DNA from: Macrostomum lignano
Lineage: Eukaryota
Reading direction: 5' to 3'
Assembly (NCBI GenBank): GCA_002269645.1
Contig: NIVC01001389.1
Coordinates: 234,318 to 298,317 of the forward strand
Length of the DNA stretch: 64,000 nt
This document shows positions 19,340-38,444 of the stretch, in pieces. The translations under genes were made by a program, and so were the position numbers. The notes under the pieces are model-generated. The model saw only the letters and a program-made list of their open reading frames with translations, ran no database searches and was not told where the DNA came from. Each line of letters opens with the position of its first letter. Position 1 is the stretch's first letter.

Positions 19340-20445
19340 TGTCAGACAGTGAATTGTGTCAGGCAGTGAATTGTGTCAGGCAGTGAATTGTGTCAGGCAG
19401 TGAATTGTGTCAGGCAGTGAATTGTGTCAGGCAGTGAATTGTGTCAGGCAGTGAATTGTGTCAGGCAGTGAATTGTGTCAGGCAGTGAATTGTGTCAGGA
19501 GTGAATTGTGTCAGGCAGTGAATTGTGTCAGGCAGTGAATTGTGTCAGGCAGTGAATGTGTCAGGCAGTGAATTGTGTCAGGCAGTGAATTGTGTCAGGC
19601 AGTGAATTGTGTCAGGCAGTGAGTCAGTGAATTGTGTCAGGCAGTGAATTGTGTCAGGCAGTGAATTGTGTCAGGCAGTGAATTGTGTCAGGCAGTGAAT
19701 TGTGTCAGGCAGTGAATGTGTCAGGCAGTGAATTGTGTCAGGCAGTGAATTGTGTCAGGCAGTGAATTGTGTCAGGCAGTGAATTGTGTCAGGCAGTGAA
19801 TTGTGTCAGGCAGTGAATTGTCAGGCAGTGAATTTGTCAGGCAGTGAATTGTGTCAGGCAGTGAATTATGTCAGGCAGTGAGTCAGGAAGTGAATTGTGT
19901 CAGGCAGTTGACTATGTCAGAAAGTGAATTTTGTCAGGTAGTGAATTATGTCAGGCAGTGAATTGTGTCAGGCAGTGAATTATGTCAGGCAGTGAATTGT
20001 GTCAGGCAGTTGACTATGTCAGGAAGTGAATTTTGTCAGGCAGTAATGTCAGGCAGTGAATTGTGTCAGGCAGTGACTATGTCAGGAAGTGAATTGTGTC
20101 AGGCAGTTGACTATTTCAGAAAGTGAATTTTGTCAGGTAGTGAATTATGTCAGGCAGTGAATTGTGTCAGGAAGTGAATTGTGTCAGGCAGGGAATTTTG
20201 TCAGGCAGTGAATTGTGTCAGGCAGTGAATTGTGTCAGGCAGTGAATGTGTCAGGCAGTGAACTGTGTCAGGCAGTGAATTGTGTCAGGCAGTGAATTGT
20301 GTCAGGCAGTGAATTATGTCAGGCCGTGAATTTCGTCAGGCAGTGAATTGTGTCAGGAAGTGAATTATGTCAGGCAGTGAATTGTGTCAGGAAGTGAATT
20401 GTGTCAGGCAGTTGACTATTTCAGAAAGTGAATTTTGTCAGGTAG
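19340..20445. repeat. 17-bp minisatellite GTGTCAGGCAGTGAATT
   Basis: Direct reading. Confidence 0.97.
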
Positions 20446-20999
20446 TAGCTCGTAAATCTTCCCTCAGTCTGATTAGTCACGTGAGAAGCTATTTCAAGCC
20501 CCAATGATTTAAGCAGTTCGCGGTCAGAGCTGATTGCATAACAAGCCGCACATCTGTGACAGTCTGAGTCACACAGGCGCCGAGTAGGATTACAACTTTC
20601 TGTGTGGGATTTTGGGGGCACAGGGAGCGGGGATTTCTGCTGCCAAGTCTCGGCTGCTGTTGCAGTTGACTTTGAGAGCTCCTCCTGCTCTCCTGCTTTC
20701 AGTCACTAGTGCTGGTGAGTCACCGCTCAGAGCTCTCATTCAGTGACGACCCCCTCCCACGCTTGACAACCAATTATCTCTGTGAGGGTGCCAAATGTGA
20801 CAACTCTGCCTGTCTACAGCCACTGCTGGGCTCAACCTGGACGACTTATAGGGGGGAATGTTTAGTATAATATCTCTGATTGACAGGTGAATGACCACTC
20901 ACTGACAATGAATTTTGCCAAATTTCTGTCTGACTCAAGCTACCGTAAAAATTACATCCTAATGAATAAATTCCGGAATTATAAAAAAAAGACATTAGA

Positions 21000-21830
21000 C
21001 AGATACAGACTCTCTGACAGACGGATACAGATTCATTGACAGACAGATACAGACTCTGACAGATACAGACTCGTTGACAGACAGATACAGACTCGCTGAC
21101 AGACAGATACAGACTCGTTGACAGACAGATACAGACTCGCTGACAGACAGATACAGACTCGTTGACAGACAGATACAGACTCGTTGACAGACAGATACAG
21201 ACTCGTTGACAGACAGATACAGACTCGTTGACAGACAGATACAGACTCGTTGACAGACAGATACAGACTCGCTGACAGACAGATACAGACTCGTTGACAG
21301 ACAGATAAAGAATCGCTGACAGACAGATACAGACTCATTGACAGACAGATACAGACTCGTTGACAGACAGATACAGACTCACTGACAGACAGATACAGAC
21401 TCGCTGACAGACAGATACAGACTCGCTGACAGACAGATACAGACTCGTTGACAGACAGATACAGACTCGCTGACAGACAGATACAGACTCGTTGACAGAC
21501 AGATACAGACTCGTTGACAGACAGATACAGACTCGTTGACAGACAGATACAGACTCGTTGACAGACAGATACAGACACAGACAGATACAGACTCGCTGAC
21601 AGACAGATACAGACTCGACAGACAGATGACACAGACAGATACAGACTCACTGACAGACAGATACAGACTCGACAGACAGATACAGACTCGCTGACAGACA
21701 GATACAGACTCGCTGACAGACAGATAAAGAATCGCTGACAGACAGATACAGACTCATTGACAGACAGATACAGACTCGTTGACAGACAGATACAGACTCA
21801 CTGACAGACAGATACAGACTCGCTGACAGT
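21000..21830. repeat. 22-bp minisatellite GACAGACAGATACAGACTCG(T/C)T
   Basis: Direct reading. Confidence 0.97.
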
Positions 21831-22564
21831 CACAATGAAATCCCAACTCATTTTGGTTTCCAATTCAGTCAGTCAAATATGAATCATACGCGGATTCCCT
21901 CATCAGATTTCAGTGAGGCCAGCCTCCCCACACGGAAGCCTCGCCATCCGACTCGGCTCCAGGGTGACTCAAACCATTTTTGCTAAAAGCCAACGGGAGA
22001 CAGACGGAAAGAAAAAGAAATTCAAGAATGACACGCTCATCGGAGCAAAGGATTTGCCTCACTCAGCTCAGGAGTGGCTCGCTGGTCTATTCTTTGACAC
22101 TTTCACTGGCAGCCACTGGGACAGACAGGCAGGAGCTCAGGTGAGTCCGGTGCATGAGCAGGCCTCCCCGTGTCAGTCTGACTCGTCACCCGCTATAGTC
22201 ACTGGCGGATTATCGGGGCGGCAAATTTAGCCCGGGTGACTAAGAGACCTGCAAACACTGGGGCGGTGGGGAGGCGGGGAAGTCAGGGGGGAGGAAGAAA
22301 ATGCTACAAATTCTCCCCATGGCTATCGCCATTGAAACAGGCAATGCGGGGGGGGGTCGTCCGCCCCCCTCCGCGTCTCCTCACTCGCTTTTCTCCCGAC
22401 TTCCCCCTCACGGCTCAGGTGGGGGAGGCGGTCGCCAGGCTGGCAGCTGCTTTCAGCGGCGCCCCCTGCTCTCCCCGCCGTCTGAGCTGCTTTTTTGGGC
22501 GGCAGGGACTTCTGTTGGAAGGAATCTGGATTGGAGGCCCGGCTGGGTGACGCGGTGCAGTTTG

Positions 22565-24055
22565 AGACATTGAGGCGCCAAAACTGAGCATTGAGGCCCC
22601 AAAACTGCGCTTTGATGCGCCAAAACTGGGAATTGAGGCGCCAAAATTGGGCATTGATGCAGTGAGGCGCCAAAACTGGGCATTGAGGCGCCAAAACTGA
22701 GCATTGAGGCGCCAAAATTGGGCATTGAGGCGCCAAAAATGGGCATTGAGGCGCCAAAATTGGGCATTGAGGCGCCAAAAATGGGCATTGAGGCGCCAAA
22801 ACTGAGCATTGAGGCGCCAAAACTGAGCATTGAGGTGCCAAAACTGAGCATCGAGGCGCCAAAACTGGGCATTGAGGTGCCAAAACTGAGCATTGAGACG
22901 CCAAAACTGGGCATTGAGGCGCCAAAACTGGGAATCGAGGTGCCAAAACTGAGCATTGAGGCGCCAAAGCTAACATTGAGGCGCCAAAACTGAGCATTGA
23001 GACGCCAAAAATGGGCATTGAGGCGCCAAAACTGAGCATTGAGGCGCCAAAACTGAGCATTGAGGCGCCAAAATTGGGCATTGATGCAGTGAGGCGCCAA
23101 AACTGGGCATTGAGGCGCCAAAACTGAGCATTGAGGCGCCAAAACTGAGCATTGAGGTGCCAAAACTGAGCATCGAGGCGCCAAAACTGGGCATTGAGGT
23201 GCCAAAACTGAGCATTGAGACGCCAAAACTGGGCATTGAGGCGCCAAAACTGGGAATCGAGGTGCCAAAACTGAGCATTGAGGCGCCAAAGCTAACATTG
23301 AGGCGCCAAAACTGAGCATTGAGACGCCAAAAATGGGCATTGAAGCGCCAAAACTGAGCATTGAGGCGCCAAAACTGAGCATTGAGGCGCCAAAATTGGG
23401 CATTGATGCAGTGAGGCGCCAAAACTGGGCATTGAGGCGCCAAAACTGGGAATCGAGGTGCCAAAACTGAGCATTGAGGCGCCAAAGCTAACATTGAGGC
23501 GTCAAAACTGAGCATTGAGGCGCCAAAACTGAGCATTGAGGCGCCAAAACTGGGCATTGAGGCGCCAAAACTGAGCATTGAGGCGCCAAAATTGGGCATT
23601 GATGCAGTGAGGCGCCAAAACTGGGCATTGAGGCGCCAAAACTGGGAATCGAGGTGCCAAAACTGAGCATTGAGGCGCCAAAACTGAGCATTGAGGCGCC
23701 AAAGCTAACATTGAGGCGTCAAAACTGAGCATTGAGGCGCCAAAACTGGGCATTGAGGCGCCAAAGCTAACATTGAGGCGCCAAAACTGAGCATTGAGGC
23801 GCCAAAACTGGGTATTGAGGCGCCAAAACTGGGAATTGAGGCGCCAAAACTGAGCATTGAGGCGCCAAAACTGGGTATTGAGGCGCCAAAACTGGGAATT
23901 GAGGCGTCAAAACTGAGCATTGAGGCGCCAAAACTGAGCATTGAGGCGCCAAAACTGGGCATTGAGGCGCCAAAGCTAACATTGAGGCGCCAAAACTGAG
24001 CATTGAGGCGCCAAAACTGGGTATTGAGGCGCCAAAACTGGGAATTGAGGCGCCT
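22565..24055. repeat. 21-bp minisatellite TGAGGCGCCAAAACTGAGCAT with recurring variant blocks
   Basis: Direct reading; the landmark variant GCATTGATGCAG recurs near 22650, 23080, 23400 and 23600. Confidence 0.97.
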
Positions 24056-24664: not shown

Positions 24665-27600
24665 ATGATCAAGAGTCGGTCAGCCTTCAACATGCCGAGC
24701 AACCGGCCTCGCCGTAGTGAGCTGCTCATGTTTTTATTTTATACTTTTCCTTTGTTGGCTTTGAGTACAGATTGAGTTGCTGCTGAGAGCATAGATGTGG
24801 GATAGATAGATGTGGAGTTGATAGATGTGGGATAGATAGATGTGGGGTAGATCGATGCCGGGAAGATTGATGTGGAGTAAATAGATGTGAAGTAGATAGA
24901 TGTGGAGTAGATAGAAGTGAAGTAGATAGATGTGGAGTAGATAGATGTGAAGTAGATAGATGTGGAGTAGATAGCTGTGGAGTAGATAGATGTGGGATAG
25001 ATAGATGTGGGGTGGATAGATGTGGGGTGGATAGATGTGGGATAGATAGATGTGGGATAGATAGATGTGGGGTAGATAGATGTGGGATAGATAGATGTGG
25101 GGTAGATAGATGTGGGATAGATAGATGTGGGATAGATAGATGTGGGGTAGATAGATGTGGGATAGATAGATGTGGGGTAGATAGATGTGGAGTAGATAGA
25201 TGTGGGGTAGATAGATGTGGGGTGGATAGATGTGGGATAGATAGATGTGGGGTAGATAGATGTGGGGTGGATAGATGTGGGATAGATAAATGTGGGGTAG
25301 ATAGATGTGGGGTAGAAAATAAGGGGTAGATAGATGTGGGGTGGATAGATGTTGGATAGATAGATGTTTGTAGAGCCGCAATCGACCGGGAAGTTCAGGC
25401 AGAAGTTCAGGCAGCAGTTCATGCAGCAGTTCAGGCAGCAGTTCAGGCAGCAGTTCAGGCAGCAGTTCAGGCAGCAGTTCAGGCAGCAGTTCAGGCAGCA
25501 GTTCAGGCAGCAGTTCAGGCAGCAGTTCAGGCAGCAGTTCAGGCAGCAGTTCAGGCAGCAGTTCAGGCAGCAGTTCAGGCAGCAATTCAGGCAGAAGTTC
25601 AGGCAGCAGTTCAGGCAGCAGTTCAGGCAGAAGTTCAGGTAGCAGTTCAGGCAGCAGTTCAGGCAGCAGTTCAGGCAGCAGTTCAGGCAGCAGTTCAGGC
25701 AGCAGTTCAGGCAGCAGTTCAGGCAGAAGTTCAGGCAGCAGTTCAGGCAGCAGTTCAGGCAGCAGTTCAGGCAGGTTCTTCCCCGCCCTCCCAGTCTGGC
25801 TAAACGGAGTCGGAGCTCAGAGCTGCAGCGGCAAGGAGGCGGAGCTGAGAAAGTCGCTGCCCTACTGCGACGCCGAGACTGGCACCAAGAACCGAGGTGC
25901 GACGCCTCATCTCTCTTTGTTGTACTTTTCCTATCGCAGCCTTTGCACTCAGCAGACTGATCTGCACCGCCAATTCTCACCCGCAGTTGTGGAGCGGGAC
26001 CCCATCGCCGGCCTGGGGCTGCTGGGCAAGGAGTACGATCCGTTCCTGGAGACTCGGCAGTCCAGCACGCCCAGAACTGCCAGGGACAAAGGTGAGACAT
26101 GGGGAATCCCGCGAGAGGAAGGAGACTGAAGTTTTGAGAGTCATGAGAGTCATGCAGAACTGGTGAGAGTCATGCAGAACTGGTGAGAGTCATGCAGAGC
26201 CGGTGAGAGTCATGCAGAACCGGTGAGAGTCATGCAGAACTGGTGAGAGTCATGCAGAGCCGGTGAGAGTCATACAGAGCCAGTGAGAGTCATGCAGAGC
26301 CAGTGAGAGTCATGCAGAGCTAATAAGAGTCATACAGAGCCGGTGAGAGTCATGCAGAGCCAGAAAGAGTTATGCAGAGCCAGAAAGAGTCATACAGAGC
26401 CGGTGAGAGTCATGCAGAGTCAGTGACAAAACCGGTGAGAGTCATGCAGAGCCGGTGAGAGTCATGCAGAACTGGTGAGAGTCAAGCAGAGCCGGTGAGA
26501 GTCATGCAGAACTGGTGAGAGTCAAGCAGAGCCGGTGAGAGTCATGCAGAGCCGGTGAGAGTCATGCAGAACTGGTGAGAGTCAAGCAGAGCCGGTGAGA
26601 GTCATGCAGAACTGGTGAGAGTCAAGCAGAGCCGGTGAGAGTCATGCAGAACTGGTGAGAGTCAAGCAGAGCCGGTCAGAGTCATATAGAACCGGTGAGA
26701 GTCATACAGAGCCGGTGAGAGTCATATAGAACCGGTGAGAGTCATGCAAAGCCAGTGAGAGTCATACAGAGCCGGTGAGAGTCAAGCAGAGCCGGTCAGA
26801 GTCATACAGAGTCAGTGAGAGTCATGCAGAGCCAGTGACAGAACCGGTGAGAGTCGTACAGAGCCGGTGAGAGTCATACAGTACCAGTGAGAGTCATGCA
26901 GAGCCAGTGACAGTCATGCAATGACCCGCCCGATTGCAGACTCGCGCAACCCCATCCTGGGGCAGGGCAACCTGGGCCAGGAGGTGAACCTGTTCAGCCG
27001 GTCCGAGGGCTACAAGAGCAGCCGGAAGAGTGAGTCAGCCCCGAATTCTGTTACTCCTATTAATTAAATTAGCAGTAATTAAAACCACTGCAGTTAATCT
27101 GCAGCGCCACTAGAAAACAGGGCGGGGGGTCGGCGGTCTGATCGGAGGGTTGACTTCGGCGGTCCAGGAACAAAGGAGGCCGTGTCCTCAAACCGGAGCC
27201 GGGGTCCCACCGACCGGCTGGGTGGCCCTCCTTTCGGAGCTGGATATGCGAAACCCGAGCTAGTGGAGGAGATGGAGGGAAAATGAAATGAGAATGCAGG
27301 GAGAATGAAGGGTGACTGAAGGGGAGAATGAAGGGAGAATGAAGGGAGAATGAAGGGAGAATGAAGGAGAATGAAGGGAGAATGCAGGGAGAATGCAGGG
27401 AGAATGTAGGGAGAATGCAGAGAGAATGCAGAGAGAATGCGGGGAGAATGCAGGGAGAATGCAGGGAGAATGCAGGGAGAATGCAAGGAGAATGCAGGGA
27501 GAATGCAGGGAGAATGCAGGGAGAATGCAGGGAGAATGCAGGGAGAATGCAGGGAGAATGCAGGGAGAATGCAGGGAGAATGCAGGGAGAATGCAGGGAG

Positions 27601-30600
27601 AATGCAGGGAGAATGCAGGGAGAATGCAGGGAGAATGCAGGGAGAAACTGACTTCAGGTCCCAAGCCTCTCGGCCCCTCGCCGCCTCCCCGCAGGCCGCA
27701 ACCCGCTGGAGCAGCCTGAGAACGGCAACTCGGAGGCGGACCGGCTGAGGCCGCGCGGCCGGCCGGGCAAGGCGAGCATCCACCAAGGTGAGTGGCAGTT
27801 TCCCAGGCCAGAGCAGCAGCCACCCCCACAGTGTCCTGGGCCGCACAGTTTGCACAGAGAGCCGCCATTTTAGTGCTTTCTCGGAGCCAGGCCGTGGGAC
27901 GCCCCACCCCGGTTTTTATTATCCAAATTGCTTTGCTTGAGTGCTTTCTGAACAAAAAAGTTAAAATTGCTGGTTTCCTCTGTTGCTTCTTCTAGGGGAG
28001 GCGCGGAACAGAAATGTCTACAGCCTGGGTAATATTTTTACCGCAAAAAAATCAGAATTGAAATGGCACAGGTGGTTAAACTGCTCATTCGGGGCGAGAA
28101 TTTATTTTATTTACCATGGCAGACTGGGTTTGACCGCTCGGGTGGAAACCCAGGCAGCCCAGGTAGCGGCCTGATTATGCTAATTAGCACTTGGGCAGCC
28201 TGCTATGGGGGTTTGAAAATGCTAATTTCTATCTGGCTTTCCTGCTTATCAGCTGTGAGTCACCGAAAAACTTGGGGGCTTCGAACTCGCACAGCCGTGT
28301 GGCTGGCAATGAGTTTATTTATTTTCTTAGCGGCGTGAACAATCCTTAGGGCGCCTGGATTTGACACCTCCGGCGGCTTTACCTCCTAATCACTAACTGT
28401 AGCATCATCTCGTGACTCCCCTGTAGTAGCTCCCATAAACATAAACACCTCAGTGTAACGCCTCCCCCCACAGTAGCTCCCACCCCAGCCATAAACACTT
28501 CAGTGTAACGCCTCCCCCACAGTAGCTCCCACCCCAGCCATAAACACCCCAGTGTAACGCCTCCCCCACAGTAGCTCCCACCCCAGGCATAAACACCTCA
28601 GTGTAACGCCTCCCCCCACAGTAGCTTCCACCCCAGCCATAAACACCCCAGTGTGGCGCCTCCACCACAGAAGCTCCCACCCCAGCCATAAACACCCCAG
28701 TGTGACGCCTCCCCCACAGTAGCTTCCACCCCAGCCATAAACACCCCAGTATAACGCCTCCCCCACAGTAGCTCCCACCCCAGCCATAAACACCCCAGTG
28801 TAACGCCTCCCCCACAGTAGCTCCCACCCCAGCCATAAACACCCCAGTGTAACGCCTCCCCCACAGAAGCTCCCACCCCAGCCATAAACACCCCAGTGTG
28901 GCGCCTCCCCCCAAAACCCCTAACCCTAGCTCTAACCCTAACCCTAACCCTTACTCACTCCAGCCCAGCGCGACCCGATCTCCGGCCGCGGCGAGTTCGG
29001 CCGCGAATGGGACCCGGTGCACAAGTACGCCGGCCGGCCGAGGCCCTGGCATCAGCGCGCCGTGGACGGTGAGTCTCGGCCATAGACAGGCCAGACACAG
29101 GCTTGAAGTGAAAGCTTGGCTCAGAGCCTTCATTGCAGCCTCCAGTGCTTATCTGCAGCCGAACCATGATTCCCCCCGCATAGATTCCCGCTATTACAAG
29201 CTCAGCGAGAGGCCAACAGTTTCAAAGACCGACAAAAAGTACATTCTCGGCTACTACGGTAGGCGTCCAGCTCTCGCGGTCTCACAACTTGCTCTGGACA
29301 GATTAATACTTCTTACCGCTGTTGGGGCAACTGCATGATATTTTTTCCGAGCTTAACTCTTTGATGAAGCATTGAAGAGACAAAATTTAACTTTAACTGC
29401 ATGCTGTTGGATTTCGGACATTTCAACCCGCCTGTCACGGTGCTTGGCCGTATTGTTTTATCTTTAATTTACAGAAAGCAATTATTTACTTATAGTCCTA
29501 CTGACTCGCAGGAAAGTAGTAGTGTAGTATGGATATGTAATTTCATAATAAAATCCCGAATTTAACAGCCAAACGCGGCGGTCGCTGCAACCCGCTGACT
29601 GGCGAGGACGCCAAGAGTTTCGACATCAACCAGGAGCTCCGGCGGACTCCGCGCAAAGGAGTCAGTGAGTGACATTCTGGATTCATGCCCATTTATAATA
29701 GTTGTTTTTGGAAGTCATTTTCAAAGCTAGCTACTCAGCAGTAGTTGGACAGTAGTGTAATGCGCTCACGCCGCCCGACCTGAACTCCGCGCAGAGAAAA
29801 GCAACCCGGTCACTGGGGAGAACTGCGACAGCTACACCGTGTCCGACAAGCTGAATGAGAAGCACGCGAAGTCGGGCAGCAAGACGCCAAGGGGTGAGCA
29901 GGGAGGCCTGGCTAAGCTGCCATTTACCACTTCCAGTGATAAAATTATGCTTTTCAAAGCCAACTTCAACACATATCGGTAGAAGACTGGTTATCATACA
30001 ATTGAACCCTGTGTCAATTCTGTGTCACAATTGTCAGTCACCTCTAATCTCATTACCTGTCTTTTCATGCCTAATCTCATTACCTGTCTTCTCATGCCTA
30101 ATCTCATTACCTGTCTTTTCATGCCTAATCTCATTACCTGTCTTCTCATGCCTAATCTCATTACCTGTCTTTTCATGCCTAATCTCATTACCTGTCTTCT
30201 CATGCCTAATCTCATTACCTGTCTTTTCATGCCTAATCTCATTACCTGTCTTCTCATGCCTAATCTCATTACCTGTCTTCTCATGCCTAATCTCATTACC
30301 TGTCTTCTCATGCCTAATCTCATTACCTGTCTTCTTATGCTTAATCTCATTACCTGTCTTCTCATGCCTAATCTCATTACCTGTCTTCTTATGCTTAATC
30401 TCATTACCTGTCTTCTCATGCCTAATCTCATTACCTGTCCTCTCATGCCTAATCTCATTACCTGTCTTCTCATCCCTGATCTCGTTACCTGTCTTCTCAT
30501 GCCTAATCTCATTACCTGTCTTCTCATGCCTAATCTCATTACCTGTCTTCTCATCCCTGATCTCATTACCTGTCCTCATTCTCATTACCTCATCAATGTA

Positions 30601-33600
30601 ATCTTATCACCCAAGGCTCAGGCGGCAACCCGGTCACCGGGGAGAACTGCAAGTCCTTCGACTTCAACATCGAGTCGAAGTCGAAGTCGGCCGGCAGCTC
30701 GCCCAGGAAGAGCGGCAGCGGCGGCAACCCGGTCACCGGGGAGAACTGCGCTGTGTACGCCTACAGCAGCGAGTTCAAGACCAAGCCCAACAAGCCGAAC
30801 GGTGAGTGTGGGATCTGAGCATCAAAATGGGGATCTGAGCATCAAAATGGGGGTCTGAGCATCAAAATGGGGATCTGATGAGAGTCTGAGCATCAAATGG
30901 GGATCTGAGCATTAAACTGGGGATCTGAACATCAAAATGGGGGTCTGAGCATCAAAATGGGGATCTGAGCATCAAAATGGGGGTCTGAGCATCAAAATGG
31001 GGGTCTGAGCATCAAAATGGGGATCTGAGCATCAAAATGGGGATCTGAGCATCAAAATGGGGATCTGAGCATCAAAATGGGGGTCTGAGCATCAAAATGG
31101 GGATCTGATGAGAGTCTGAGCATCAAAATGGGGATCTGAACATCGAAATGTGGATCTGAACATCAAAATGGGGATCTGATGAGAGTCTGAGCATCAAATG
31201 GGGATCTGAGCATCAAATGGGGATCTGAACATCAAAATGGGGGTCTGAGCATCAAAATGGGGATCTGAGTATTAAAATGGGACCTGAGCATTAAAATGGG
31301 GATCTGAACATCAAAATGGGGGTCTGAGCATCAAAATGGGGATCTGAGCATCAAAATGGGGATCTGAACATCAAAATGGGGATCTGAACATCAAAATGGG
31401 GATCTGAACATCAAAATGGGGATCTGAGCATCAAAATGGGGATCTGAGTATTAAAATGGGGATCTGAGCATCAAAATGGGGATCTGAGTATTAAAATGGG
31501 GATCTGAGTATTAAAATGGGGATCTGAGTATTAAAATGGGACCTGAGCATTAAAATGGGGATCTGAACATCAAAATGGGGGTCTGAGCATCAAAATGGGG
31601 ATCTGAGTATTAAAATGGGGATCTGAGCATCAAAATGGGGATCTGAGTATTAAAATGGGGATCTGAGTATTAAAATGGGGATCTGAGTATTAAAATGGGA
31701 CCTGAGCATTAAAATGGGGACCTGAGCATTAAAATGGGGATCTGAACATCAAAATGGGAGTCTGAGCATCAAAATGGGGATCTGAGCATCAAAATGGGGA
31801 TCTGAACATCAAAATGGGGATCTGAACATCAAAATGGGGATCTGAGCATCAAAATGCGGATCTGAACATCAAAATGGGGATCTGAACATCAAAATGGGTA
31901 TTTGAACACTCAGATGAGAATCTGAGCATTGCCAAGAGCTCACGTGGCTGAGCAGCTTGTTGTCAATGAGTTCCCCGCCAGACAGTCACAACTCCCGGCT
32001 GCTTGCAGAGCGCAAGAATCCCCTGACAGGGGAGAACGTGAGCAGCTTCGTGCTGAAGCTGACGGAGCGGGCCGACCAGCCGAAACCCGCGGCGCCTCAC
32101 AGCCCGAGTATGACCGCCTGCGGCTGACCCGCCTTCCACTTCCCCAGCACCGACCCCGCCATCTTGCAGAGTGCATGAGATCTCTATTGGAAATTGGTTT
32201 ATCGAATGCTTAACCTTCTTCCCCCCCCCCTGATCAACCCGATCTGAGGATTGCATACTATTTGAGTTCATTTCATGGCGACCTTGGGAGGCAGTTTACT
32301 TTAAAGTCTTGCATGAACCCTTCGTTGAAGCGGAACTGCTTGTTTTGTTAAAAAGAAAACTTTTAATGCGGTTTTTGGTTTATCTATTTGCATGGCTAAT
32401 TAAGATTGATTTTCATCGAAATTCAGGTGTGTTAAACAGTACTAAAGGATTTTACATGAAAAATTTTGCGTAAGAAACCGTCATTTTTAAGAAATCGTCA
32501 TTTCTAAGAAACCTTCCTTTCTAAGAAACCTTCCTTTCTAAGAAACCGTCTTTTCTAAGAAACCGTCTTTTCTAAGAAACCGTCTTTTCTAAGAAACCGT
32601 CTTTTCTAAGAAACCGTCATTTCTAAGAAAGCGTCATTTTCAATAAACTGTAATTACTAGGAAATCTTTTACTCAAAGAAATCGTTTCTACGAAGTTTGT
32701 TTACGAAAAAATATTTATTTCTAAAAAAAAGCTATTTCTATGAGATCGTTCTTTCCAAGATTTCGATGAAATTTTCAATTTCTTTCATTTTTTCTGAGAA
32801 ACAGTTATTCAGCAATTGATACAACATGATGCATGAATACTTTTGCGACTTAAAAAGTGAAATTTAAGGCTTCACTCCGCATGCGGCAATGGATATTTCC
32901 TTCATCCCCACAATTACTGTCGCCCTATTATTCCCATCGCACGCTGTCCGGCTCGAACTCAGGCGAGGCCAAGAACCCGCTCACCGGGGCCAACTGCCCG
33001 AGCTTCTCCGTCAACCAGGAGGAGAGGCCAAGGACCGCCCCCAGCGCGCTCGCAACTCGTGAGTGCCCAGATTTGCACTTTTGCACAGATCGCAGGCGCA
33101 CTATCTGCACCTCTGTCACACTGCATCAAGCAGGGAGACTGGAAAGGGACAGTATCGATGCGGTCAGACCTCGTAACCACTGTCACAGTCTATCACATGC
33201 TGTGACACCCTATCACATGCTGTGACACCCTGTCACATGCTGTCACAAATAATCGCATGCTATCACATCCTGGAGTACTCTGTCACACCCTGTTGCACCC
33301 TGTCACAAACGTCTCAAACCCCAATCACCGGTCCCACAGCCCGCGCCAGCTCCAACCCGGTGACAGGCGAAGGCTGCCGCCACTACGTGGTGTGCACCGG
33401 TGAGAAGAAGCTCTCGGCCAGCCCGCAGACGCCCAGAGAGGCGGGCGGCAACCCGCTGACTGGCAGCAACGTCCGCTGCTTCGACATCAACCAGGAGATG
33501 CGGATCAACAGGCGGGGCAATGAGAGTGAGGCTCGAATTAATACCACTGATAAGCAATGGGTCTCACAATAATCTCACTGATAAGCAATGGGTCTCACAA

Positions 33601-35487
33601 TAATCTAACTGATAAGCAATGGGTCTCACAATAATCTCACTGATAAGCAATGGGTCTCACAATAATCTCACTGATAAGCAATGGGTCTCACAATAATCTA
33701 ACTGATAGGCAATGGGTCTCACAATAATCTCACTGATAAGCAATGGGTCTCACAATAATCTCACTGATAAGCAATGGGTCTCACAATAATCTCACTGATA
33801 AGCAATGGGTCTCACAATAATCTCACTGATAAGCAATGGGTCTCACAATAATCTCACTGATAAGCAATGGGTCTCACAATAATCTCACTGATAAGCAATT
33901 GGTCTCACAATAATCTCACTGATAAGCAATGGGTCTCACAATAATCTCACTGATAAGCAATGGGTCTCACAATAATCTCACTGATAAGCAATGGGTCTCA
34001 CAATAATCTCACTGATAAGCAATGGGTCTCACAATAATCTCACTGATAAGCAATGGGTCTCACAATAATCTCACTGATAAGCAATGGGTCTCACAATAAT
34101 CTCACTGATAAGCAATTGGTCTCACAATAATCTCACTGATAAGCAATGGGTCTCACAATAATCTCACTGATAATCCCCAAAAACCCGCAGGCGCCAGGCC
34201 CGCAGAGAACGGCCACCACCAGACCAACGGAGTGGCCTGCGATGCGGCCGTCATGTCCGGTGAGAAATCGAGATGGGAGGCTGGAAGATGAAGGGAGGAT
34301 CGTGCGGTGGAAAGGATGGTGTGAGAGGGAGTTGTTTGAGCGGGGAGAGTGGTGTGAGAGGGGAGAGTGGTGTGAATGGGGAGAGTGGTGTGAGAGGGGA
34401 GAGTGGTGTGAGAGGGGAGAGTGGTGTGAGAGAGGAGAGTGGTGTGAGGGAGAGTGGTGTGAGGGAGAGTGGTGTGAGAGAGGAGAGTGGTGTGAGGGAG
34501 AGTGGTGTGAGGGAGAGTGGTGTGAGAGGGGAGAGTGGTGTGAGGGAGAGCGGTGTGAGAGGGGAGAGTGGTGTGAGGGAGAGTGGTGTGAGAGGGGAGA
34601 GTGGTGTGAGGGAGAGCGGTGTGAGAGGGGAGAGTGGTGTGAGGGAGAGTGGTGTGAGGGAGAGTGGTGTGAGGGAGAGTGGTGTGAGGGAGAGTGGTGT
34701 GAGAGGGGAGAGTGGTGTGAGAGGGAGTGGTGTGAGAGGGGAGAGTGGTGGGAGAAGGGAGAGTGGTGTGAGAGGGAGTTGTTTGAACGGGGAGAGTGGT
34801 GTGAGAGGGGAGAGTGGTGTGAGGGAGAGCGGTGTGAGAGGGAGTTGTTTGAACGGGGAGAGTGGTGTGAGGGAGAGTGGTGTGAGAGGGGAGAGTGGTG
34901 TGAGAGGGGAGAATGGTGTGAGAGGGAGTGGTGTGAGAGGGGAGAGTTATGTGAGGGAGAGTGGTGTGAGAGGGAGTGGTGTGAGGGAGAGTGGTGTGAG
35001 AGGGGAGAGTGGTGTGAGGGAGAGTGGTGTGAGAGGGAAGAGTGGTGTGAGAGGGGAGAGTGGTGTGAGAGGGAGTGGTGTGAGAGGGGAGAGTGGTGTG
35101 AGGGAAAGTGGTGTGAGAGGGGAGAGTGGTGTGAGGGGAGAGTGGTGTGAGAGGGGAGAGTGGTGTGAATGGGGAGAGTAGTGTGAGAGGGGAGAGTAGT
35201 GTGAATGGGGAGAGTGGTGTGAGAGGGGAGAGTGGTGTGAATGGGAAGAGTGGTGTGAGAGGGGAGAGTGGTGTGAATGGGAAGAGTGGTGTGAGAGGGA
35301 GTGCTGTGAGAGGGAGAGTAGTGTGAGGGAGGGTGGTGTGAGAGGGAGAGTAGTGTGAGGGAGGTTGGTGTGAGAGGGAGAGTAGTGTGAGAGGGGAGAG
35401 TGGTGTCAGGGGAGAGTGCTATGAGAAGTGTCTATGGCCAATCCTCGCCCCTCTGCAGCCAGAAGCAACCCGATCACCGGGATGTGA
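24665..35487 (+). CDS. Uncharacterised repeat protein, about 491 aa, with about 13 [ND]P[ILV]xG repeats (resembles the NPVTG motif of the microtubule-associated protein Jupiter); 15 exons: 24665-24716, 25795-25896, 25987-26091, 26940-27029, 27695-27787, 28964-29068, 29184-29258, 29569-29664, 29795-29893, 30622-30801, 32009-32107, 32963-33058, 33340-33525, 34191-34259, 35459-35487
   Basis: GCCGCCATG start. All introns are GT-AG and phase 1, all 13 internal exons are multiples of 3, and the spliced 1476 nt has no internal stop. GC3-rich codons. AATAAA at about 35767 and 36337. The first three exons are less certain than the repeat exons. Confidence 0.8.
24790..25365. repeat. 15-bp minisatellite GATAGATGTGGGGTA
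   Basis: Direct reading; intron 1 of the repeat-protein gene. Confidence 0.96.
25390..25774. repeat. 12-bp minisatellite GTTCAGGCAGCA
   Basis: Direct reading. Confidence 0.97.
26135..26920. repeat. 20-bp minisatellite GGTGAGAGTCATGCAGAGCC
   Basis: Direct reading. Confidence 0.96.
27290..27645. repeat. 11-bp minisatellite GGGAGAATGCA
   Basis: Direct reading. Confidence 0.96.
28425..28912. repeat. About 49-bp minisatellite CAGTGTAACGCCTCCCCCACAGTAGCTCCCACCCCAGCCATAAACACCC
   Basis: Direct reading. Confidence 0.95.
30045..30590. repeat. 27-bp minisatellite CCTAATCTCATTACCTGTCTTCTCATG
   Basis: Direct reading. Confidence 0.97.
30810..31930. repeat. 21-bp minisatellite GGATCTGAGCATCAAAATGGG
   Basis: Direct reading; starts within about 10 nt of the donor at 30802. 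Confidence 0.97.
32470..32640. repeat. 17-bp minisatellite TTCTAAGAAACCGTCTT
   Basis: Direct reading. Confidence 0.93.
33545..34172. repeat. 31-bp minisatellite CACTGATAAGCAATGGGTCTCACAATAATCT
   Basis: Direct reading; fills almost the whole intron 33526-34190. Confidence 0.97.
34310..35420. repeat. GA/GT-rich 15-18 bp minisatellite (GGGGAGAGTGGTGTGAGA)
   Basis: Direct reading. Confidence 0.95.
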
Positions 35488-36519
35488 GCGACAGACCACC
35501 GCTACAAGCTGCTCCTCAAAAATTCCCTGGCCCTGAGCCTTGGAGACGTGCGGTTGCTACTGCTGCATCAAGTCCTTGCTGAACCCTGAGCCACTGAACC
35601 AGACCTGAATTCCCCCAGCCCTCCTTCCTCTCTTTCTGATCCTCTCTCCGTTTGGTCATATTTTATTGTCATTAATGAACTCCGTGTCTGTTTACCCTTT
35701 TGTTTACACGCGTTCTGCACTCGGTCTCCCTGCTGTGCACTTTAGTGTAAAAGTACATATCAACCGATAATAAAAGTACAGCCCACTAAAGGTGCTTCAC
35801 TGCCAGCCAATCAAATCAGCTGCTCCCGTATTTCCTATTCGGTGACTTGCTTCAGTTTTGTTGTACTTTTATCCAGCCGCCGCACTTTTACTTGTTGAAC
35901 CGCCCCCAGCAGTGCTTTGCTTTCTCTTGCTTTTTGTTTGCTTTTTGGAAGGAATTTTTCCTTGCCTTGCTGCCTCTCCGTTCCTCGGTTTGGTTGAAGA
36001 CAAAATTTTCGCTCATTGATTTTCGTAAAGTTTTTATTGCGGTGGATAATTAGGGATTTGAAGTGAGAAAGCTGCTCACCTGCCTCTGTTAACCAAGGAT
36101 TTCCCTGCAACTATTTACTCTTGATTTTAACATTTTAAAATTTTAACATCAAATTTAATGAAATTTACATTGCTTTTTTCTCCAACCTACTTTATATAGT
36201 ACTCGCAGTAGTGTATTAAATATTATAGAATGCAATTTTTTGGCGCTGTTTTAAATTTAACTAATAGTGAATTCTATTTAGACCTTCTGCTGTGCCAGCA
36301 TGTTTATTAATATCCAATAACCCTGCTTTCAGTCCCAATAAAAATAAAACACAGAGAAATGCTTCTTTCAGCTGTAAGAACTTCTGGCCCGCGTGTCTCA
36401 GACTTTGTTAGCATAGAAATATTGCGGCAAAGTCTGATGCTGAGGGCATCTCAATGGGATTGGAGAGACATTTACTAACAGATATTTGACAGAAATTTGA
36501 TTGAAATTCGAGAGACTCT

Positions 36520-36820
36520 CACACCCTGTCACATCCTGTCACACCCTGTCTCAGCCTGTCACACCCTGTCTCAGCCTGTCACACCCTCTCACATCCTGGC
36601 ACACCCTGTCTCAGCCTGTCACAACCGTCTTAGCATGTCACAACCTGTTTCAGCCTGTCACACCCTGTAACACCCTGTCACACCCTGTCACACCCTGTCA
36701 CACCCTGTCACATCCTGTCCCACCCAGTCTCAGCCTGTCACCCTGGCTCAGCCTCTCACACTGTCACACCCTGTCACACCCTGTCACACCCTGTCACACC
36801 CTGTCACACCCTGTCACACT
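36520..36820. repeat. 10-bp repeat TGTCACACCC
   Basis: Direct reading; a shorter degenerate copy lies at about 33180-33310. Confidence 0.92.
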
Positions 36821-37139
36821 ACAAACAGAAGGCATCAGCTACAGTTGGCAAGAGATGCTGGGCAGCCGAGTCAGAAGCCGCTCCACCTGCCAGCCACTGC
36901 CAACGCAAGTTTCTCACCGAGCCGTTCGGCAACCAGAAGTACCGAAATCTCTTGTTTTACAGCACTGTGCATTGGCTTCAGAATAACAAATTTATTTGTA
37001 ACAAACGGCTGTCACTCAACAGTGTTCTGTGTACTGTTTTTTTATTAATACTTTTCTGTGAATGCTGATTGAGACTGCTCTGCGCCCTCACACATGTCTC
37101 TCCTCACCTCTTGCTGTTTCTCCTCCCTTCATCTCCCCA

Positions 37140-37960
37140 TTCATCTCAATCTCTCTCCCTCTCTCCTTCCCTTTCTCCCTCCTCTTCCTCTATCTCTTCC
37201 GCGCTCTCTCCCTCTCTCCCTCTCTCCCTCTCTCCCTCTCTCCCTCTCCCTCTCTCCCTCTCTCCCTCTCTCCCTCTCTCCCTCTCTCCCTGCATCTCCC
37301 CCTGTATCTCTCCCTCTCTCCCTCTCTCCCTCTCTCCCTCTCTCCCTCTCTCCCTCTCTCCCTGCATCTCCCCCTGTATCTCTCCCTCCATCTCTCCCTG
37401 CATCTCTCCCTCCATCTCTCCCTCCATCTCTCCCTACATCTCTTCCTCCATCTCTCCCTCCATCTCTCCCTGCATCTCTTCTCCATCTCTCCCTGCATCT
37501 CTCCCTGCATCTCTCCCTCCATCTCTCCCTCCATCTCTCCCTGCATCTCTCCCTGCATCTCTCCCTCCATCTCTCCCTGCATCTCTCCCTCCATCTCTCC
37601 CTGCATCTCTCCCTGCATCTCTCCCTGCATCTCTCCCTGCATCTCTCCCTCCATCTCTCCCTCCATCTCTCCCTCCATCTCTCCCTGCATCTCTCTCTCC
37701 ATCTCTCCCTCCATCTCTCCCTCCATCTCTCCCTGCATCTCTCCCTGTATCTCTCCCTCCATCTCTCCCTCCATCTCTCCCTCCATCTCTCCCTGCATCT
37801 CTCCCTGTATCTCTCCCTCCATCTCTCCCTCCATCTCTCCCTCCATCTCTCCCTCCATCTCTCCCTGCATCTCTCCCTGTATCTCTCCCTCCATCTCTCC
37901 CTCCATCTTTCCCTCCATCTCTCCCACCATCTCTCCATCTCTCCCTGCATCTCTCCTTCC
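37140..37960. repeat. Polypyrimidine repeat (CTCTCC)n grading into 12-bp CATCTCTCCCT(C/G)
   Basis: Direct reading. Confidence 0.96.
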
Positions 37961-38444
37961 GAGAAGTATGAGAATAAGGGGGTTGGAAAATGAGGCAGTT
38001 CCAGCCTCGAGCAGCTCACAGGAAGCTGGGAAACTCACAGTTTGCATTTTTGCAACGCAGAATTTTTCGCACACTTTGAACTTCGCGTTGGCAACTGCAT
38101 TGAAGCTGTTTATTATTTTTACAAGATTATAATTTCATTTGAAACGGGACACCCAGCTCTAGCGATGTCAGATGGCTACAGCCGCCTAAAAACCTGAGAG
38201 GGGGACCGGCAGGCACCCCAGTTGAAAAAACTGACTGCAAAAGTTGCTACAATTTGCAGAGAGAATTTCACTTCGAAAAATTATTTGCAAGTTTGCGTTT
38301 CTGGATTCCACAGGTTTCTCAGGCGCGCCTCGCGTTATTAATCTTAAAGATTCTCCGATTTCAACACCAGGCTTAAGCTGGAAAATGCTGCACGGGTCAG
38401 TACAGCTTTGGTTTTTCCCAAGCAGCAGCAGCAGATAACGGCAC

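What the first reader, a model, noticed from the sequence alone, without database searches (positions are those of the whole stretch)
24665..35487. Hidden 15-exon gene built from one-repeat-per-exon [ND]P[ILV]xG modules, all in phase 1
Seen: exons of mostly 69-105 nt encode DPIAG, NPILG, NPLEQ, DPISG, NPLTG, NPVTG, NPVTG x2, NPLTG, NPLTG, NPVTG+NPLTG and a terminal NPITGM*. The core consensus is roughly NP[LV]TGEN[CV]xS[FY]x[IV]N, spaced about 30-33 aa. The splice site falls a few codons before each motif, and the two 180/186-nt exons hold two repeats. Every internal exon can be skipped in frame. Established: Drosophila Jupiter has an NPVTGEG motif, and many microtubule-binding proteins use short spaced repeats. 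Inference: an uncharacterised, largely disordered, basic microtubule or cilium lattice-binding repeat protein grown by exon duplication, with combinatorial splicing potential. I recognise no named domain.
Basis: partly seen in the sequence, partly recalled or inferred. Interest (0 to 1): 0.75.

Follow-up and report, generated by a model that had tools for sequence, protein, structure and literature searches.

The report
Flatworm Jupiter-like microtubule repeat protein gene
The window holds a real, already annotated but unstudied flatworm gene whose 15 small exons each encode one copy of a short motif, the same motif that sits in tubulin's taxane pocket in a protist cilium protein, so it is probably a many-handed microtubule binder.

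Summary
Window 24665-35487 (+) holds a 15-exon gene. All 14 introns are GT-AG and phase 1, and all 13 internal exons are multiples of 3. There is one repeat per exon, two in each of the two 186-nt exons.

The gene is not hidden. The 14-exon product is identical to GenBank PAA68543.1 (Macrostomum lignano BOX15_Mlig011212g1, "hypothetical protein"). The 15-exon form matches a second locus apart from one substitution.

An exhaustive profile search finds the family only in flatworms and nemerteans. Echinococcus and the nemertean Lineus share the same phase-1, one-repeat-per-exon layout, so the repeat array is ancient. RefSeq lists 14 Lineus isoforms that differ by whole repeat exons.

The protein is basic and predicted to be disordered. 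It has no Pfam or PDB match.

Several lines tie it to MAP Jupiter/JPT. Lineus carries the Jupiter N-terminal PPGG box behind the same phase-2 intron. NPITGE is nearly invariant in invertebrate Jupiter-like proteins. A phase-1 intron lies 5-6 codons upstream of it in two chelicerate genes. The window protein itself fails the Pfam and PPGG-box tests.

In cryo-EM work on protist CFAP213, NPITGE loops occupy beta-tubulin's taxane pocket.

Best reading: a repeat-expanded Jupiter offshoot that binds microtubules multivalently. Tubulin binding is untested.

The parts
24665..24716 (+). Exon 1: start codon, MIKSRSAFNMPSNRPRR. It ends in phase 1 with donor gtgagc.
   Evidence: There is an in-frame stop upstream of the ATG. 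Same N-terminus as PAA68543.1.
25795..25896 (+). Exon 2 (102 nt, phase 1-1): family-specific N-terminal box, ...EAELRKSLPYCDAETGTKNR. It is the only stretch with a predicted helix.
   Evidence: The box is conserved in cestodes and trematodes. AF2 predicts a helix at residues 31-38.
25987..26091 (+). Exon 3 (105 nt, 1-1): class A repeat, RDPIAGLGLLGKEYDP.
   Evidence: R55, D56, P57, I58, G60 and G62 are invariant in the family.
26940..27029 (+). Exon 4 (90 nt, 1-1): class A repeat, RNPILGQGNLGQE.
27695..27787 (+). Exon 5 (93 nt, 1-1): degenerate class A repeat, RNPLEQPENGNSEADRLRP. The orthologues have RNPIxLTGxLGxEVDxLR here.
28964..29068 (+). Exon 6 (105 nt, 1-1): class A repeat, RDPISGRGEFGREWDPVHKYAGR. 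This is the best conserved module of the family.
29184..29258 (+). Exon 7 (75 nt, 1-1): cassette exon without the motif (SRYYKLSERPTVSKTDKKYILGYY). It is present in some annotated models and absent in others.
   Evidence: Present in P0002 and P0159, absent in P0001.
29569..29664 (+). Exon 8 (96 nt, 1-1): class B repeat 1, NPLTGEDAKSFDIN.
29795..29893 (+). Exon 9 (99 nt, 1-1): class B repeat 2, NPVTGENCDSYTVS.
30616..30801 (+). Exon 10 (186 nt, 1-1): class B repeats 3 and 4. There is a tandem alternative acceptor at 30622.
   Evidence: The Echinococcus orthologue also has a double-repeat exon at this ordinal position.
32009..32107 (+). Exon 11 (99 nt, 1-1): class B repeat 5, NPLTGENVSSFVLK. Its donor, gtatga, is the weakest in the gene.
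32963..33058 (+). Exon 12 (96 nt, 1-1): class B repeat 6, NPLTGANCPSFSVN.
33340..33525 (+). Exon 13 (186 nt, 1-1): class B repeats 7 and 8, NPVTGEGCRHYVV and NPLTGSNVRCFDIN.
   Evidence: This double-repeat exon is also conserved in Echinococcus.
34191..34259 (+). Exon 14 (69 nt, 1-1): spacer with no clear motif (ARPAENGHHQTNGVACDAAVMS).
35459..35487 (+). Exon 15: RSNPITGM plus the stop codon. The orthologues end in YNI[IL]TG.
35769..35774 (+). AATAAA, the likely polyadenylation signal, about 280 nt after the stop.
   Evidence: Sequence only; no transcript end was seen.

Best explanation
This is a genuine protein-coding gene of the free-living flatworm Macrostomum lignano. It encodes a 468-493 aa, basic, intrinsically disordered protein built from about 30-residue modules, each on its own phase-1/phase-1 exon. 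There are four class A modules, [RK][DN]PIxGxGxxGxE, and eight class B modules, NP[LV]TGEN[CV]x[ST][FY], plus a terminal NPITG.

The protein belongs to an unnamed family restricted to flatworms and nemerteans. That family most likely arose from the microtubule-associated protein Jupiter/JPT (HN1) family by repeated tandem duplication of the Jupiter cassette exon that carries NPITGE. The flatworm branch then lost the PPGG boxes.

Inferred mechanism: each NPxTGE module is a short tubulin-binding loop, and the array binds several beta-tubulins at once along or across protofilaments. The binding site may be the taxane pocket on the luminal face, as seen for the NPITGE loops of CFAP213. Inclusion or skipping of single repeat exons would set the number of binding sites.

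Shown here: the gene model, the family, the conserved exon architecture, the motif sharing, and the annotated isoforms in nemerteans.

Inferred: descent from Jupiter, microtubule binding, and the luminal taxane-pocket site.
For: Gene:
- The spliced product is identical to PAA68543.1.
- The 15-exon form equals PAA51443.1 apart from one substitution.

Family:
- The protein search finds Macrostomum paralogues, cestodes, trematodes and nemerteans, with E-values from 1e-279 to 1e-15.
- An exhaustive profile search of 1.84 billion cluster representatives gives only 52 hits. Most of those named are flatworm or nemertean proteins.

Architecture:
- In Echinococcus, 12 of 13 introns are phase 1, with double-repeat exons at the same positions as here.
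- In Lineus, 14 of 15 introns are phase 1, with one repeat per exon.
- The 14 Lineus RefSeq isoforms differ by whole repeat exons.

Link to Jupiter:
- One Lineus isoform starts MTSTTNSIGLNPDSRNSSRVLNPPGG. BLASTP against the scallop Jupiter-like protein gives 3e-8.
- The Lineus phase-2 intron just before VLNPPGG is at the same place as in the Argiope Jupiter-like gene.
- NPITG is at least 90% conserved in Pfam-positive invertebrate Jupiter-like proteins.
- A phase-1 intron lies 5-6 codons upstream of NPITGE in both the Argiope and a mite gene. In Argiope the motif sits on its own 138-nt phase 1-1 exon.
- hhalign of the family against the spider Jupiter paralogues gives 91.6% probability, E 8e-7.
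- Those spider paralogues hit Pfam-positive Jupiter-like proteins at 3e-13.
- A beetle protein with the Jupiter RLFG box has four NPVTG repeats 26-29 aa apart.

Mechanism:
- Jupiter, HN1 and HN1L bind or localise to microtubules (PMC11590752).
- JPT2 is luminal and is displaced by taxanes (PMC12773733).
- The GYNPITGEY loops of CFAP213 sit in the taxane pockets of beta-tubulin on two adjacent protofilaments (PMC11642885).
- The window protein is predicted to be disordered and is basic.
Against: - The window protein has no PPGG box and gives no Pfam JUPITER hit even at E<=10. The Lineus proteins give no hit either.
- The direct profile comparison with canonical invertebrate Jupiter is weak: hhalign probability 26%, E 7e-4, anchored only on the motif.
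- The shared motif is 6-7 residues long and recurs in unrelated folded proteins such as G5 domains, laminin EGF and intimin. Motif identity alone therefore proves neither homology nor function.
- In parasitic flatworms the Pro of NP is often replaced (NVITG, NTITG, NAITG), and the Tyr residues that flank the CFAP213 motif are absent here.
- JPT2's microtubule binding was mapped to the PPGGK*S boxes, which this protein lacks.
- No expression, localisation or binding data were found for any family member.
- No transcript contig carrying exactly this protein was found.
Confidence: 0.55

Rival explanations
1. It binds microtubules, but on the outer surface along protofilaments, as tau, MAP2 and MAP4 do. 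It would not use the taxane pocket in the lumen. On this reading the NPxTGE cores are anchor points on the lattice exterior.
For: - The 28-34 aa period is close to the 31-32 aa tau-type repeat, which also comes one per exon with a cassette exon (own knowledge of MAPT).
- The protein is basic and disordered, like the classical MAPs that bind the acidic tubulin surface.
- A 47-53 kDa disordered chain has no obvious route into a closed lumen.
- Drosophila Jupiter is used as a general microtubule marker.
Against: - There is no PGGG motif and no Pfam tau/MAP repeat hit.
- The only structural data for an NPITGE loop place it in the luminal taxane pocket.
- The vertebrate Jupiter homologue JPT2 is reported to be luminal.
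Confidence: 0.2
2. It is a lineage-specific disordered scaffold whose repeats resemble Jupiter and CFAP213 only by convergence. The modules would bind some other partner, for example an adaptor, an enzyme or a nucleic acid, and the protein would have nothing to do with tubulin.
For: - The motif is very short and occurs by chance or convergence in unrelated proteins.
- All formal Jupiter membership tests fail for the window protein.
- The class A modules (RDPIxGxGxFGxEWDP) are the best conserved part of the family and have no known tubulin role.
- The N-terminal box EELRKSLPxVDLETGLKNR is family-specific.
Against: - The nemertean homologue combines these repeats with a Jupiter N-terminal box and a shared intron position.
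- The phase-1 intron upstream of the motif in Jupiter genes matches the exon structure here.
- A repeat spacing of about 24-32 aa recurs in Jupiter-like proteins with two motifs and in the beetle expansion.
Confidence: 0.22
3. It is not a functional gene. On this reading the open exons are a by-product of the repeat-rich sequence, or the locus is a decaying paralogue in a polyploid genome.
For: - The window is packed with minisatellites that create long spurious ORFs.
- M. lignano carries several near-identical copies of the gene.
- No transcript contig with exactly this product was found.
Against: - All 15 exons are intact, with 14 canonical phase-1 introns.
- Conservation runs repeat by repeat across Macrostomum, cestodes, trematodes and nemerteans.
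- The exon layout is identical in Echinococcus.
- The schistosome orthologue is found on 166 short contigs of 2-5 kb from sequencing-run assemblies, although its gene spans 51 kb. They are therefore presumably transcripts.
Confidence: 0.02
4. It is what several databases call it: a 'Surface protein PspC' or TagH/G5-like bacterial-type surface protein.
For: - UniRef and GenBank give this name to the cestode and trematode orthologues.
- There are faint Pfam TagH_SH3-like hits at about the cut-off, 25.7-29.1 bits against a cut-off of 27.
Against: - The Pfam hits cover only 17-18 residues around one NxITGEN motif.
- The motif profile picks up G5 and other surface proteins solely through NPLTGE.
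- The gene is a spliced 15-exon animal gene, and the window protein has no such Pfam hit at all.
Confidence: 0.01

Closest known systems
Microtubule-associated protein Jupiter / JPT1 (HN1) / JPT2 (HN1L), Pfam PF17054
   Same: - Both are basic, disordered proteins.
- NP[IV]TGE is a nearly invariant central motif of invertebrate Jupiter-like proteins. A phase-1 intron lies 5-6 codons upstream of it, the same relation as in every class B exon here.
- When a second motif is present it is class A-like, NPVTGSG or NPITGEG.
- The nemertean member of the window's family carries the Jupiter N-terminal box behind the same phase-2 intron.
   Different: - Jupiter-like proteins are 140-250 aa with one or two motifs. 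This protein is 468-493 aa with 12-13.
- The window protein has neither PPGG box and no Pfam match.
- The direct profile-profile score is weak.
- It has its own N-terminal box and a C-terminal NPITG.
- In JPT2 the mapped microtubule-binding elements are the PPGGK*S boxes, not NPITGE.
CFAP213 / FAP213, the luminal arc-MIP of central-pair microtubules in Tetrahymena and Chlamydomonas
   Same: It shares the NPITGE core. [quoted passage not shown] It offers a structural precedent for what one module of the window protein might do.
   Different: - CFAP213 is built of long helices with only two loops. The window protein is predicted to have no fold and has 8-9 such cores.
- The flanking tyrosines are missing here.
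- CFAP213 homologues were reported mainly from protists and none from 'higher eukaryotes'.
- No overall sequence relationship was shown. The CFAP213 sequence could not be retrieved with these tools.
Tau / MAP2 / MAP4 microtubule-binding repeats
   Same: - Both are arrays of about 30-residue modules in a disordered basic protein.
- Both have one module per exon, and the module number is varied by cassette splicing. For tau this rests on my own knowledge of MAPT exon 10.
- The Lineus isoforms behave in this way.
   Different: - There is no PGGG motif and no Pfam tau repeat match.
- The core motif is different.
- The window gene has a strictly uniform intron phase.
Flatworm 'DPITH-type' paralogue subfamily (Sparganum BHF60000.1, Paragonimus KAF8567255.1, Heterobilharzia CAH8566627.1)
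   Same: It has the same N-terminal box and the same class A modules, and it ends with one RNPITGEGM module.
   Different: The class B array is replaced by DPITH-type modules followed by a long low-complexity tail.

Membership tests
MAP Jupiter / JPT (Pfam PF17054) | Match to the Pfam JUPITER profile at or above the gathering score (27 bits) | tested here: not met
   The window protein and PAA68543.1 give no hit even at E<=10. The Lineus homologues also give none. Positive controls score 39.7-51.5 bits, and the Lingula protein scores 25.9, just under the cut-off.
MAP Jupiter / JPT (Pfam PF17054) | N-terminal RVL[KR]PPGG[GS]S..[FL] box | tested here: not met
   There is no PPGG or PGG anywhere in the 15-exon product. 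The box is present in the nemertean homologue.
MAP Jupiter / JPT (Pfam PF17054) | C-terminal [RN]PPGGKSSGIF box | tested here: not met
   The C-terminus is ...ARSNPITGM. PPGGKS is invariant in the Jupiter-like set.
MAP Jupiter / JPT (Pfam PF17054) | Central NP[IV]TGE motif preceded by a phase-1 intron a few codons upstream | tested here: met
   Eight class B exons follow this pattern. The same relation holds in the Argiope and mite Jupiter-like genes. The motif is at least 90% conserved in the Jupiter-like alignment A3.
MAP Jupiter / JPT (Pfam PF17054) | Profile-level homology to canonical members | tested here: inconclusive
   hhalign against the spider Jupiter paralogues gives 91.6% probability, E 8e-7 over 43 columns. 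Against canonical invertebrate Jupiter it gives 26%, E 7e-4.
MAP Jupiter / JPT (Pfam PF17054) | Direct microtubule binding or localisation | not testable with these tools
   This needs co-sedimentation or imaging. It is known for Jupiter, HN1, HN1L and JPT2.
Flatworm/nemertean NxxTGE-RDPIxGxG repeat family (unnamed; includes Smp_150640 and the 'PspC'-misnamed cestode and fluke proteins) | Full-length, repeat-by-repeat sequence homology | tested here: met
   E-values run from 1e-279 to 1e-15 with 52-100% query coverage for all hits but one, a 21%-coverage Macrostomum model at 3.7e-15. The 13-sequence alignment has invariant N/P/T/G columns in each module. The profile search gives the same picture.
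Flatworm/nemertean NxxTGE-RDPIxGxG repeat family (unnamed; includes Smp_150640 and the 'PspC'-misnamed cestode and fluke proteins) | One module per symmetric phase-1 exon, with two double-module exons | tested here: met
   Window gene. Echinococcus multilocularis and Lineus longissimus.
CFAP213 / FAP213 | GYNPITGEY loops that bind the taxane pocket | tested here: inconclusive
   The NP[LV]TGE core is present eight times, but the flanking Tyr residues are absent. In neodermatan orthologues the Pro is often replaced. Binding itself cannot be tested here.
CFAP213 / FAP213 | Helical arc-MIP body | tested here: not met
   The AF2 model has only two short helices (residues 31-38 and 165-168) and a mean pLDDT of 43. 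FAP213 is described as 'long helices'.
Tau/MAP2/MAP4 repeat | PGGG-containing 31-32 aa repeat (Pfam Tubulin-binding) | tested here: not met
   No Pfam hit and no PGG in the protein.
Bacterial PspC / G5 / TagH SH3-like surface proteins (database names) | Domain-length match to the fold family | tested here: not met
   The only matches are 17-18 residue hits around one motif in some orthologues, at the cut-off. The window protein has none. The motif profile reaches G5 proteins only through NPLTGE.

The most novel reading that the evidence does not exclude
NPxTGE may be a portable, ancient ligand for the taxane pocket, shared by protist CFAP213, animal Jupiter proteins and this spiralian family. 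On this reading the flatworm protein is an endogenous 'poly-taxane'. It would be a disordered thread inside the microtubule lumen that plugs 8-9 loops into neighbouring beta-tubulin pockets. Splicing of single-repeat exons would set its valency, and with it the stability of the microtubule. This would answer the question left open by the CFAP213 authors, who asked what animals use in place of CFAP213. It would also give the unexplained central motif of Jupiter a function.
Probability: 0.22. Interest if true: 0.85.

Novelty: new variant of a known kind. Interest (0 to 1): 0.55.

Why it matters
Jupiter/JPT proteins are widely used microtubule markers, and HN1/JPT1 is heavily studied as a cancer marker. 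Even so, the role of the central NPITGE motif found in invertebrate Jupiter-like proteins is undescribed in the papers searched.

This family amplifies that motif 8-12 times on separately spliceable exons, and it is conserved across flatworms and nemerteans. If the motif is a tubulin taxane-pocket ligand, as the CFAP213 cryo-EM suggests, three things follow:

- The family would be a natural system in which binding valency is set by splicing.
- It would be a candidate luminal microtubule protein in animals.
- It would offer a tractable test case, because M. lignano has transgenesis and RNAi (own knowledge).

The family also includes single-copy orthologues in schistosomes, liver flukes and tapeworms. 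These currently carry misleading names such as 'Surface protein PspC', which this analysis corrects.

Tried and rejected
- **Window protein against Pfam and PDB.** Pfam gave nothing. Single-sequence and family-profile searches of PDB sequences gave nothing meaningful.
- **Spider Jupiter paralogues.** The PDB search with their profile gave nothing.
- **24-column class B repeat profile against PDB.** It returned only unrelated proteins that contain NPxTGE: intimin-like, laminin EGF and G5 domains. FAP213 was not among them.
- **Synthetic double GYNPITGEY query.** It returned only designed Kelch-like proteins. As a result the CFAP213 sequence could not be compared directly.
- **Literature.** Searches for the motif strings, for Smp_150640 and for six other locus tags found no paper on any family member.
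- **Transcript evidence for the M. lignano protein.** Only the genome contig NIVC01001389.1 carries it.
- **Look-ups for other gene structures.** Scallop, Lingula, shark and Tubulanus were not on record. The schistosome locus was fetched but was not readable in scripts, so its exon phases were not mapped.
- **Database names.** 'PspC', 'MBD domain-containing', 'EZH1 methyltransferase', 'Runt domain-containing', 'CLASP_N' and 'SH2 domain-containing' were rejected as artefacts. The reasons are short-motif hits or chimeric gene models.
- **Endocytic-adaptor reading.** I considered a role for the DPF/DPW-like EYDPF and EWDP strings. I dropped it because the dominant motif is not NPF and nothing else supports the idea.
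- **Profile-search hits judged false.** The Spirochaete DUF4215 protein and the Solemya Cys-rich protein were judged compositional false positives.

Full report
**1.

A six-frame scan of the 64-kb window for [ND]P[ILV]x[GQ] gives 15 hits, all on the + strand. For the strict [ND]P[ILV]xG pattern, the gene span has 13 hits on + and none on -, against 0.34 +/- 0.59 in shuffles.

I enumerated acceptors and donors around each motif and found one consistent solution. The homologues then revealed two further exons, and with them the model has 15 exons between 24665 and 35487.

- All 14 introns are GT-AG and phase 1.
- All 13 internal exons are multiples of 3: 102, 105, 90, 93, 105, 75, 96, 99, 186, 99, 96, 186 and 69 nt.
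- The motif begins 2-6 codons into its exon.
- The two 186-nt exons carry two repeats each.
- An in-frame stop precedes the ATG, and an AATAAA lies about 280 nt after the stop codon.

**2. The gene is annotated, not hidden**

The product without exon 7 is identical over all 468 residues to GenBank PAA68543.1. That entry is 'hypothetical protein BOX15_Mlig011212g1' of Macrostomum lignano, on contig NIVC01001389.1.

The 15-exon product (493 aa) equals PAA51443.1 (BOX15_Mlig009188g1) from another locus, apart from one substitution.

A third model, UniRef A0A1I8HD70, includes exon 7. It uses the acceptor at 30622 and a different terminal acceptor.

So the window is flatworm DNA, and the gene is known to annotation but has no name or literature.

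**3. The protein**

- The 13-exon model has pI 9.9. The 15-exon model has K+R 82 against D+E 53.
- 62% of residues are P, E, S, K, Q, G, R or N.
- No Pfam family matches at E<=10, and there is no PDB relative by sequence or by family profile.
- AlphaFold2 with the family alignment gives mean pLDDT 43 and pTM 0.15. Only two short helices appear, one of them in the N-terminal box.

This fits intrinsic disorder, with the usual caveat that a low pLDDT is not proof.

There are two module types:

- Class A, [RK][DN]PIxGxGxxGxE(x)DP, in exons 3, 4 and 6, and degenerate in exon 5.
- Class B, NP[LV]TGEN[CV]x[ST][FY]x[IV], as eight copies in exons 8-13.

The protein ends in NPITGM. Spacing is 28-34 residues wherever neighbouring modules are both intact.

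**4. The family and its age**

The protein search finds Macrostomum paralogues, single orthologues in cestodes and trematodes, and nemertean proteins. The S. mansoni orthologue is Smp_150640.

An exhaustive HMMER search with the 13-sequence profile against 1.84 billion cluster representatives gives only 52 hits at E<=1e-3. The hits that could be named fall into these groups:

- flatworms, including a monogenean and a second 'DPITH-type' paralogue subfamily;
- nemerteans;
- one beetle protein;
- two compositional false positives.

The alignment is collinear module by module, with invariant N, P, T and G columns in each module.

Exon mapping shows the same design elsewhere. In Echinococcus multilocularis, 12 of 13 introns are phase 1 and the double-repeat exons sit at the same ordinal positions. 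In Lineus longissimus, 14 of 15 introns are phase 1 with one repeat per exon.

Within the window, the class B units are only 20-63% identical in DNA outside the motif core.

The array is therefore ancient, predating the flatworm-nemertean split. It is not a recent exon amplification.

**5. Splicing potential**

Every internal exon is symmetric (1-1), so any of them can be skipped in frame.

In M. lignano the annotated models differ by exon 7 and by a 6-nt tandem acceptor.

In Lineus, RefSeq lists 14 isoforms. They differ by the presence or absence of single repeat exons, and one alternative repeat exon is found in a single isoform. Tubulanus has at least three such isoforms.

These are annotation models. 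I could not inspect reads.

**6. Relation to Jupiter/JPT**

The formal tests fail for the window protein. It has no Pfam JUPITER hit and no PPGG box. The profile-profile score against canonical invertebrate Jupiter-like proteins is weak: 26% probability, E 7e-4.

A chain of real sequences still links the two families:

(a) One marginal hit of the family profile led to a set of about 190-aa spider proteins. These contain RNPITGESCKSFD, a second NPITFEG and a terminal QPPGGK box. Their profile matches the window family at 91.6% probability, E 8e-7. It also matches Pfam-positive Jupiter-like proteins of horseshoe crab, scorpion and spider at 3e-13 to 5e-11 in a 5.8-billion-sequence database.

(b) In 12 Jupiter-like proteins from chelicerates, a scallop and a brachiopod, NPITG is at least 90% conserved, next to the PPGGKS box. 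When a second copy exists it is class A-like (NPVTGSG, NPITGEG) and lies 24-32 residues away.

(c) One Lineus isoform begins MTSTTNSIGLNPDSRNSSRVLNPPGGRVSINLFG, which is the Jupiter/JPT N-terminal box. BLASTP against the scallop protein gives 3e-8. The phase-2 intron immediately before VLNPPGG is at the same place as in the Argiope Jupiter-like gene.

(d) In Argiope, NPITGE sits alone on a 138-nt phase 1-1 exon. In a mite Jupiter-like gene, a phase-1 intron lies five codons upstream of the motif. This is exactly the exon type that is repeated in the window.

(e) A beetle protein with the Jupiter RLFG box has four NPVTG repeats 26-29 residues apart. The cassette has therefore expanded more than once.

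I read this as follows. The family is probably an offshoot of Jupiter, made by tandem duplication of the NPITGE exon. The nemertean genes keep the N-terminal box, and the flatworm genes have lost both PPGG boxes. I put this at about 0.65. It is an inference.

**7. Mechanism**

Three facts from the literature bear on what the protein does:

- Drosophila Jupiter binds microtubules directly, and HN1 and HN1L decorate interphase and spindle microtubules (PMC11590752).
- JPT2 binds microtubules directly, localises to the lumen and is displaced by taxanes. The mapped elements are its PPGGK*S boxes (PMC12773733).
- A full-text search for the motif found one relevant paper. In the cryo-EM structure of the Tetrahymena ciliary-tip central pair, the luminal protein CFAP213 has two conserved loops with the motif GYNPITGEY. 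[quoted passage not shown] The authors found homologues mainly in protists and none in 'higher eukaryotes' (PMC11642885). CFAP213 is FAP213 in Chlamydomonas.

The scallop Jupiter-like protein has SFNPITGETY and AYNPITGEEY. The window protein has eight NP[LV]TGE cores.

The most economical mechanism is that each module is a small tubulin-binding loop and the array is multivalent. A spacing of 28-34 residues could span either the 8-nm longitudinal distance or the roughly 5-nm lateral distance between beta-tubulin pockets. That is a geometric inference from my own knowledge.

Whether the site is luminal, in the taxane pocket, or on the outer surface is open. I give microtubule binding about 0.55 and the luminal pocket about 0.2-0.3.

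**8. Cautions**

- The shared core is only 6-7 residues long. A profile of the class B repeat picks up G5 domains, laminin EGF and an intimin-like protein in the PDB, purely through NPxTGE.
- The same effect explains the misleading names 'Surface protein PspC' and the faint TagH_SH3-like Pfam hits in the orthologues.
- In neodermatan orthologues the Pro is often replaced (NVITG, NTITG, NAITG). The invariant residues are N..TG followed by EN.
- The class A modules and the N-terminal box, which are the best conserved parts, have no known counterpart function.
- No expression or localisation data were found for any member. The schistosome orthologue does occur on 166 short contigs of 2-5 kb from sequencing-run assemblies, although its gene spans 51 kb. 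These are presumably transcripts.

**9. Verdict**

- Observation: confirmed.
- Interpretation: partly supported. The anatomy and the Jupiter lead are right. 'Hidden' and recent exon duplication are wrong.
- Novelty: a new variant of a known kind, namely a repeat-expanded, PPGG-less relative of Jupiter restricted to flatworms and nemerteans.
- Interest: moderate to good, because it links three separately described things (Jupiter, JPT2 in the lumen, and the CFAP213 taxane-pocket loops) and makes the link testable.

Noticed in passing
window 24791-25367, 25392-25774, 26144-26920, 27268-27646, 28440-28913, 30044-30574, 30810-31929, 32471-32664, 33545-34173, 34317-35426: Ten of the 14 introns carry minisatellite arrays with periods of 11-49 nt and 10-66 copies, and in several of them the array fills most of the intron. 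The flanking DNA is similar, for example at 20000-24054 and 36519-40000.
   Followed up: partly
window 28918-28951: An interstitial telomere-like repeat, (CCCTAA)x5.7, lies 13 nt upstream of exon 6 and forms part of its polypyrimidine tract.
   Followed up: no
window 25374-26126: One frame stays open across the (AGTTCAGGCAGC)x32 array (read as SSSG repeats), exon 2, the 90-nt intron 2 and exon 3. Retention of intron 2 would therefore add 30 residues in frame.
   Followed up: partly
window 30614-30622: Two tandem acceptors lie 6 nt apart (exon start 30616 or 30622), and different annotated models use each. PAA68543.1 has ...PRGSGGNPVTG and UniRef A0A1I8HD70 has ...PRGGNPVTG.
   Followed up: partly
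window 35493-35586: The UniRef model A0A1I8HD70 joins exon 14 to an acceptor inside the 3' UTR (exon start about 35495). This gives an alternative C-terminus, DHRYKLLLKNS..., that lacks the NPITGM end. The same model also joins the middle of exon 10 to the middle of exon 12, which looks like a repeat-mediated assembly artefact.
   Followed up: partly
window 11748-16312 (- strand): ORFs here carry reverse transcriptase, RNase H, zf-RVT, endonuclease/exonuclease/phosphatase and PHD-finger domains. This is a non-LTR retrotransposon copy split into several ORFs.
   Followed up: partly
window 51024-52685 (+) and 45468-46328 (-): The long 'ORFs' of 553 and 286 codons are just translations of tandem repeats (WNHPPFRLEPSALQ..., LSHPLWG...). 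They are not genes.
   Followed up: yes
L006 501-1091 (Argiope bruennichi CM027184.1): The spider-specific Jupiter paralogue (P0101 and relatives, about 190 aa) is encoded without introns. The canonical Argiope Jupiter-like gene spans 49 kb with 4 exons. The paralogue is probably a retrogene.
   Followed up: partly
P0038 (UniRef A0A1I8I8J6, M. lignano, 1906 aa): This gene model fuses a paralogue of the repeat protein (residues about 1354-1544) with reverse-transcriptase sequence. It is an example of the chimeric models behind the odd UniRef names in this family.
   Followed up: no
P0056 (Dendroctonus ponderosae LOC109543605, 169 aa): This bark-beetle protein has a Jupiter-type RLFG box and four NPVTG repeats 26-29 residues apart. 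It looks like an independent small expansion of the same cassette in an insect.
   Followed up: partly
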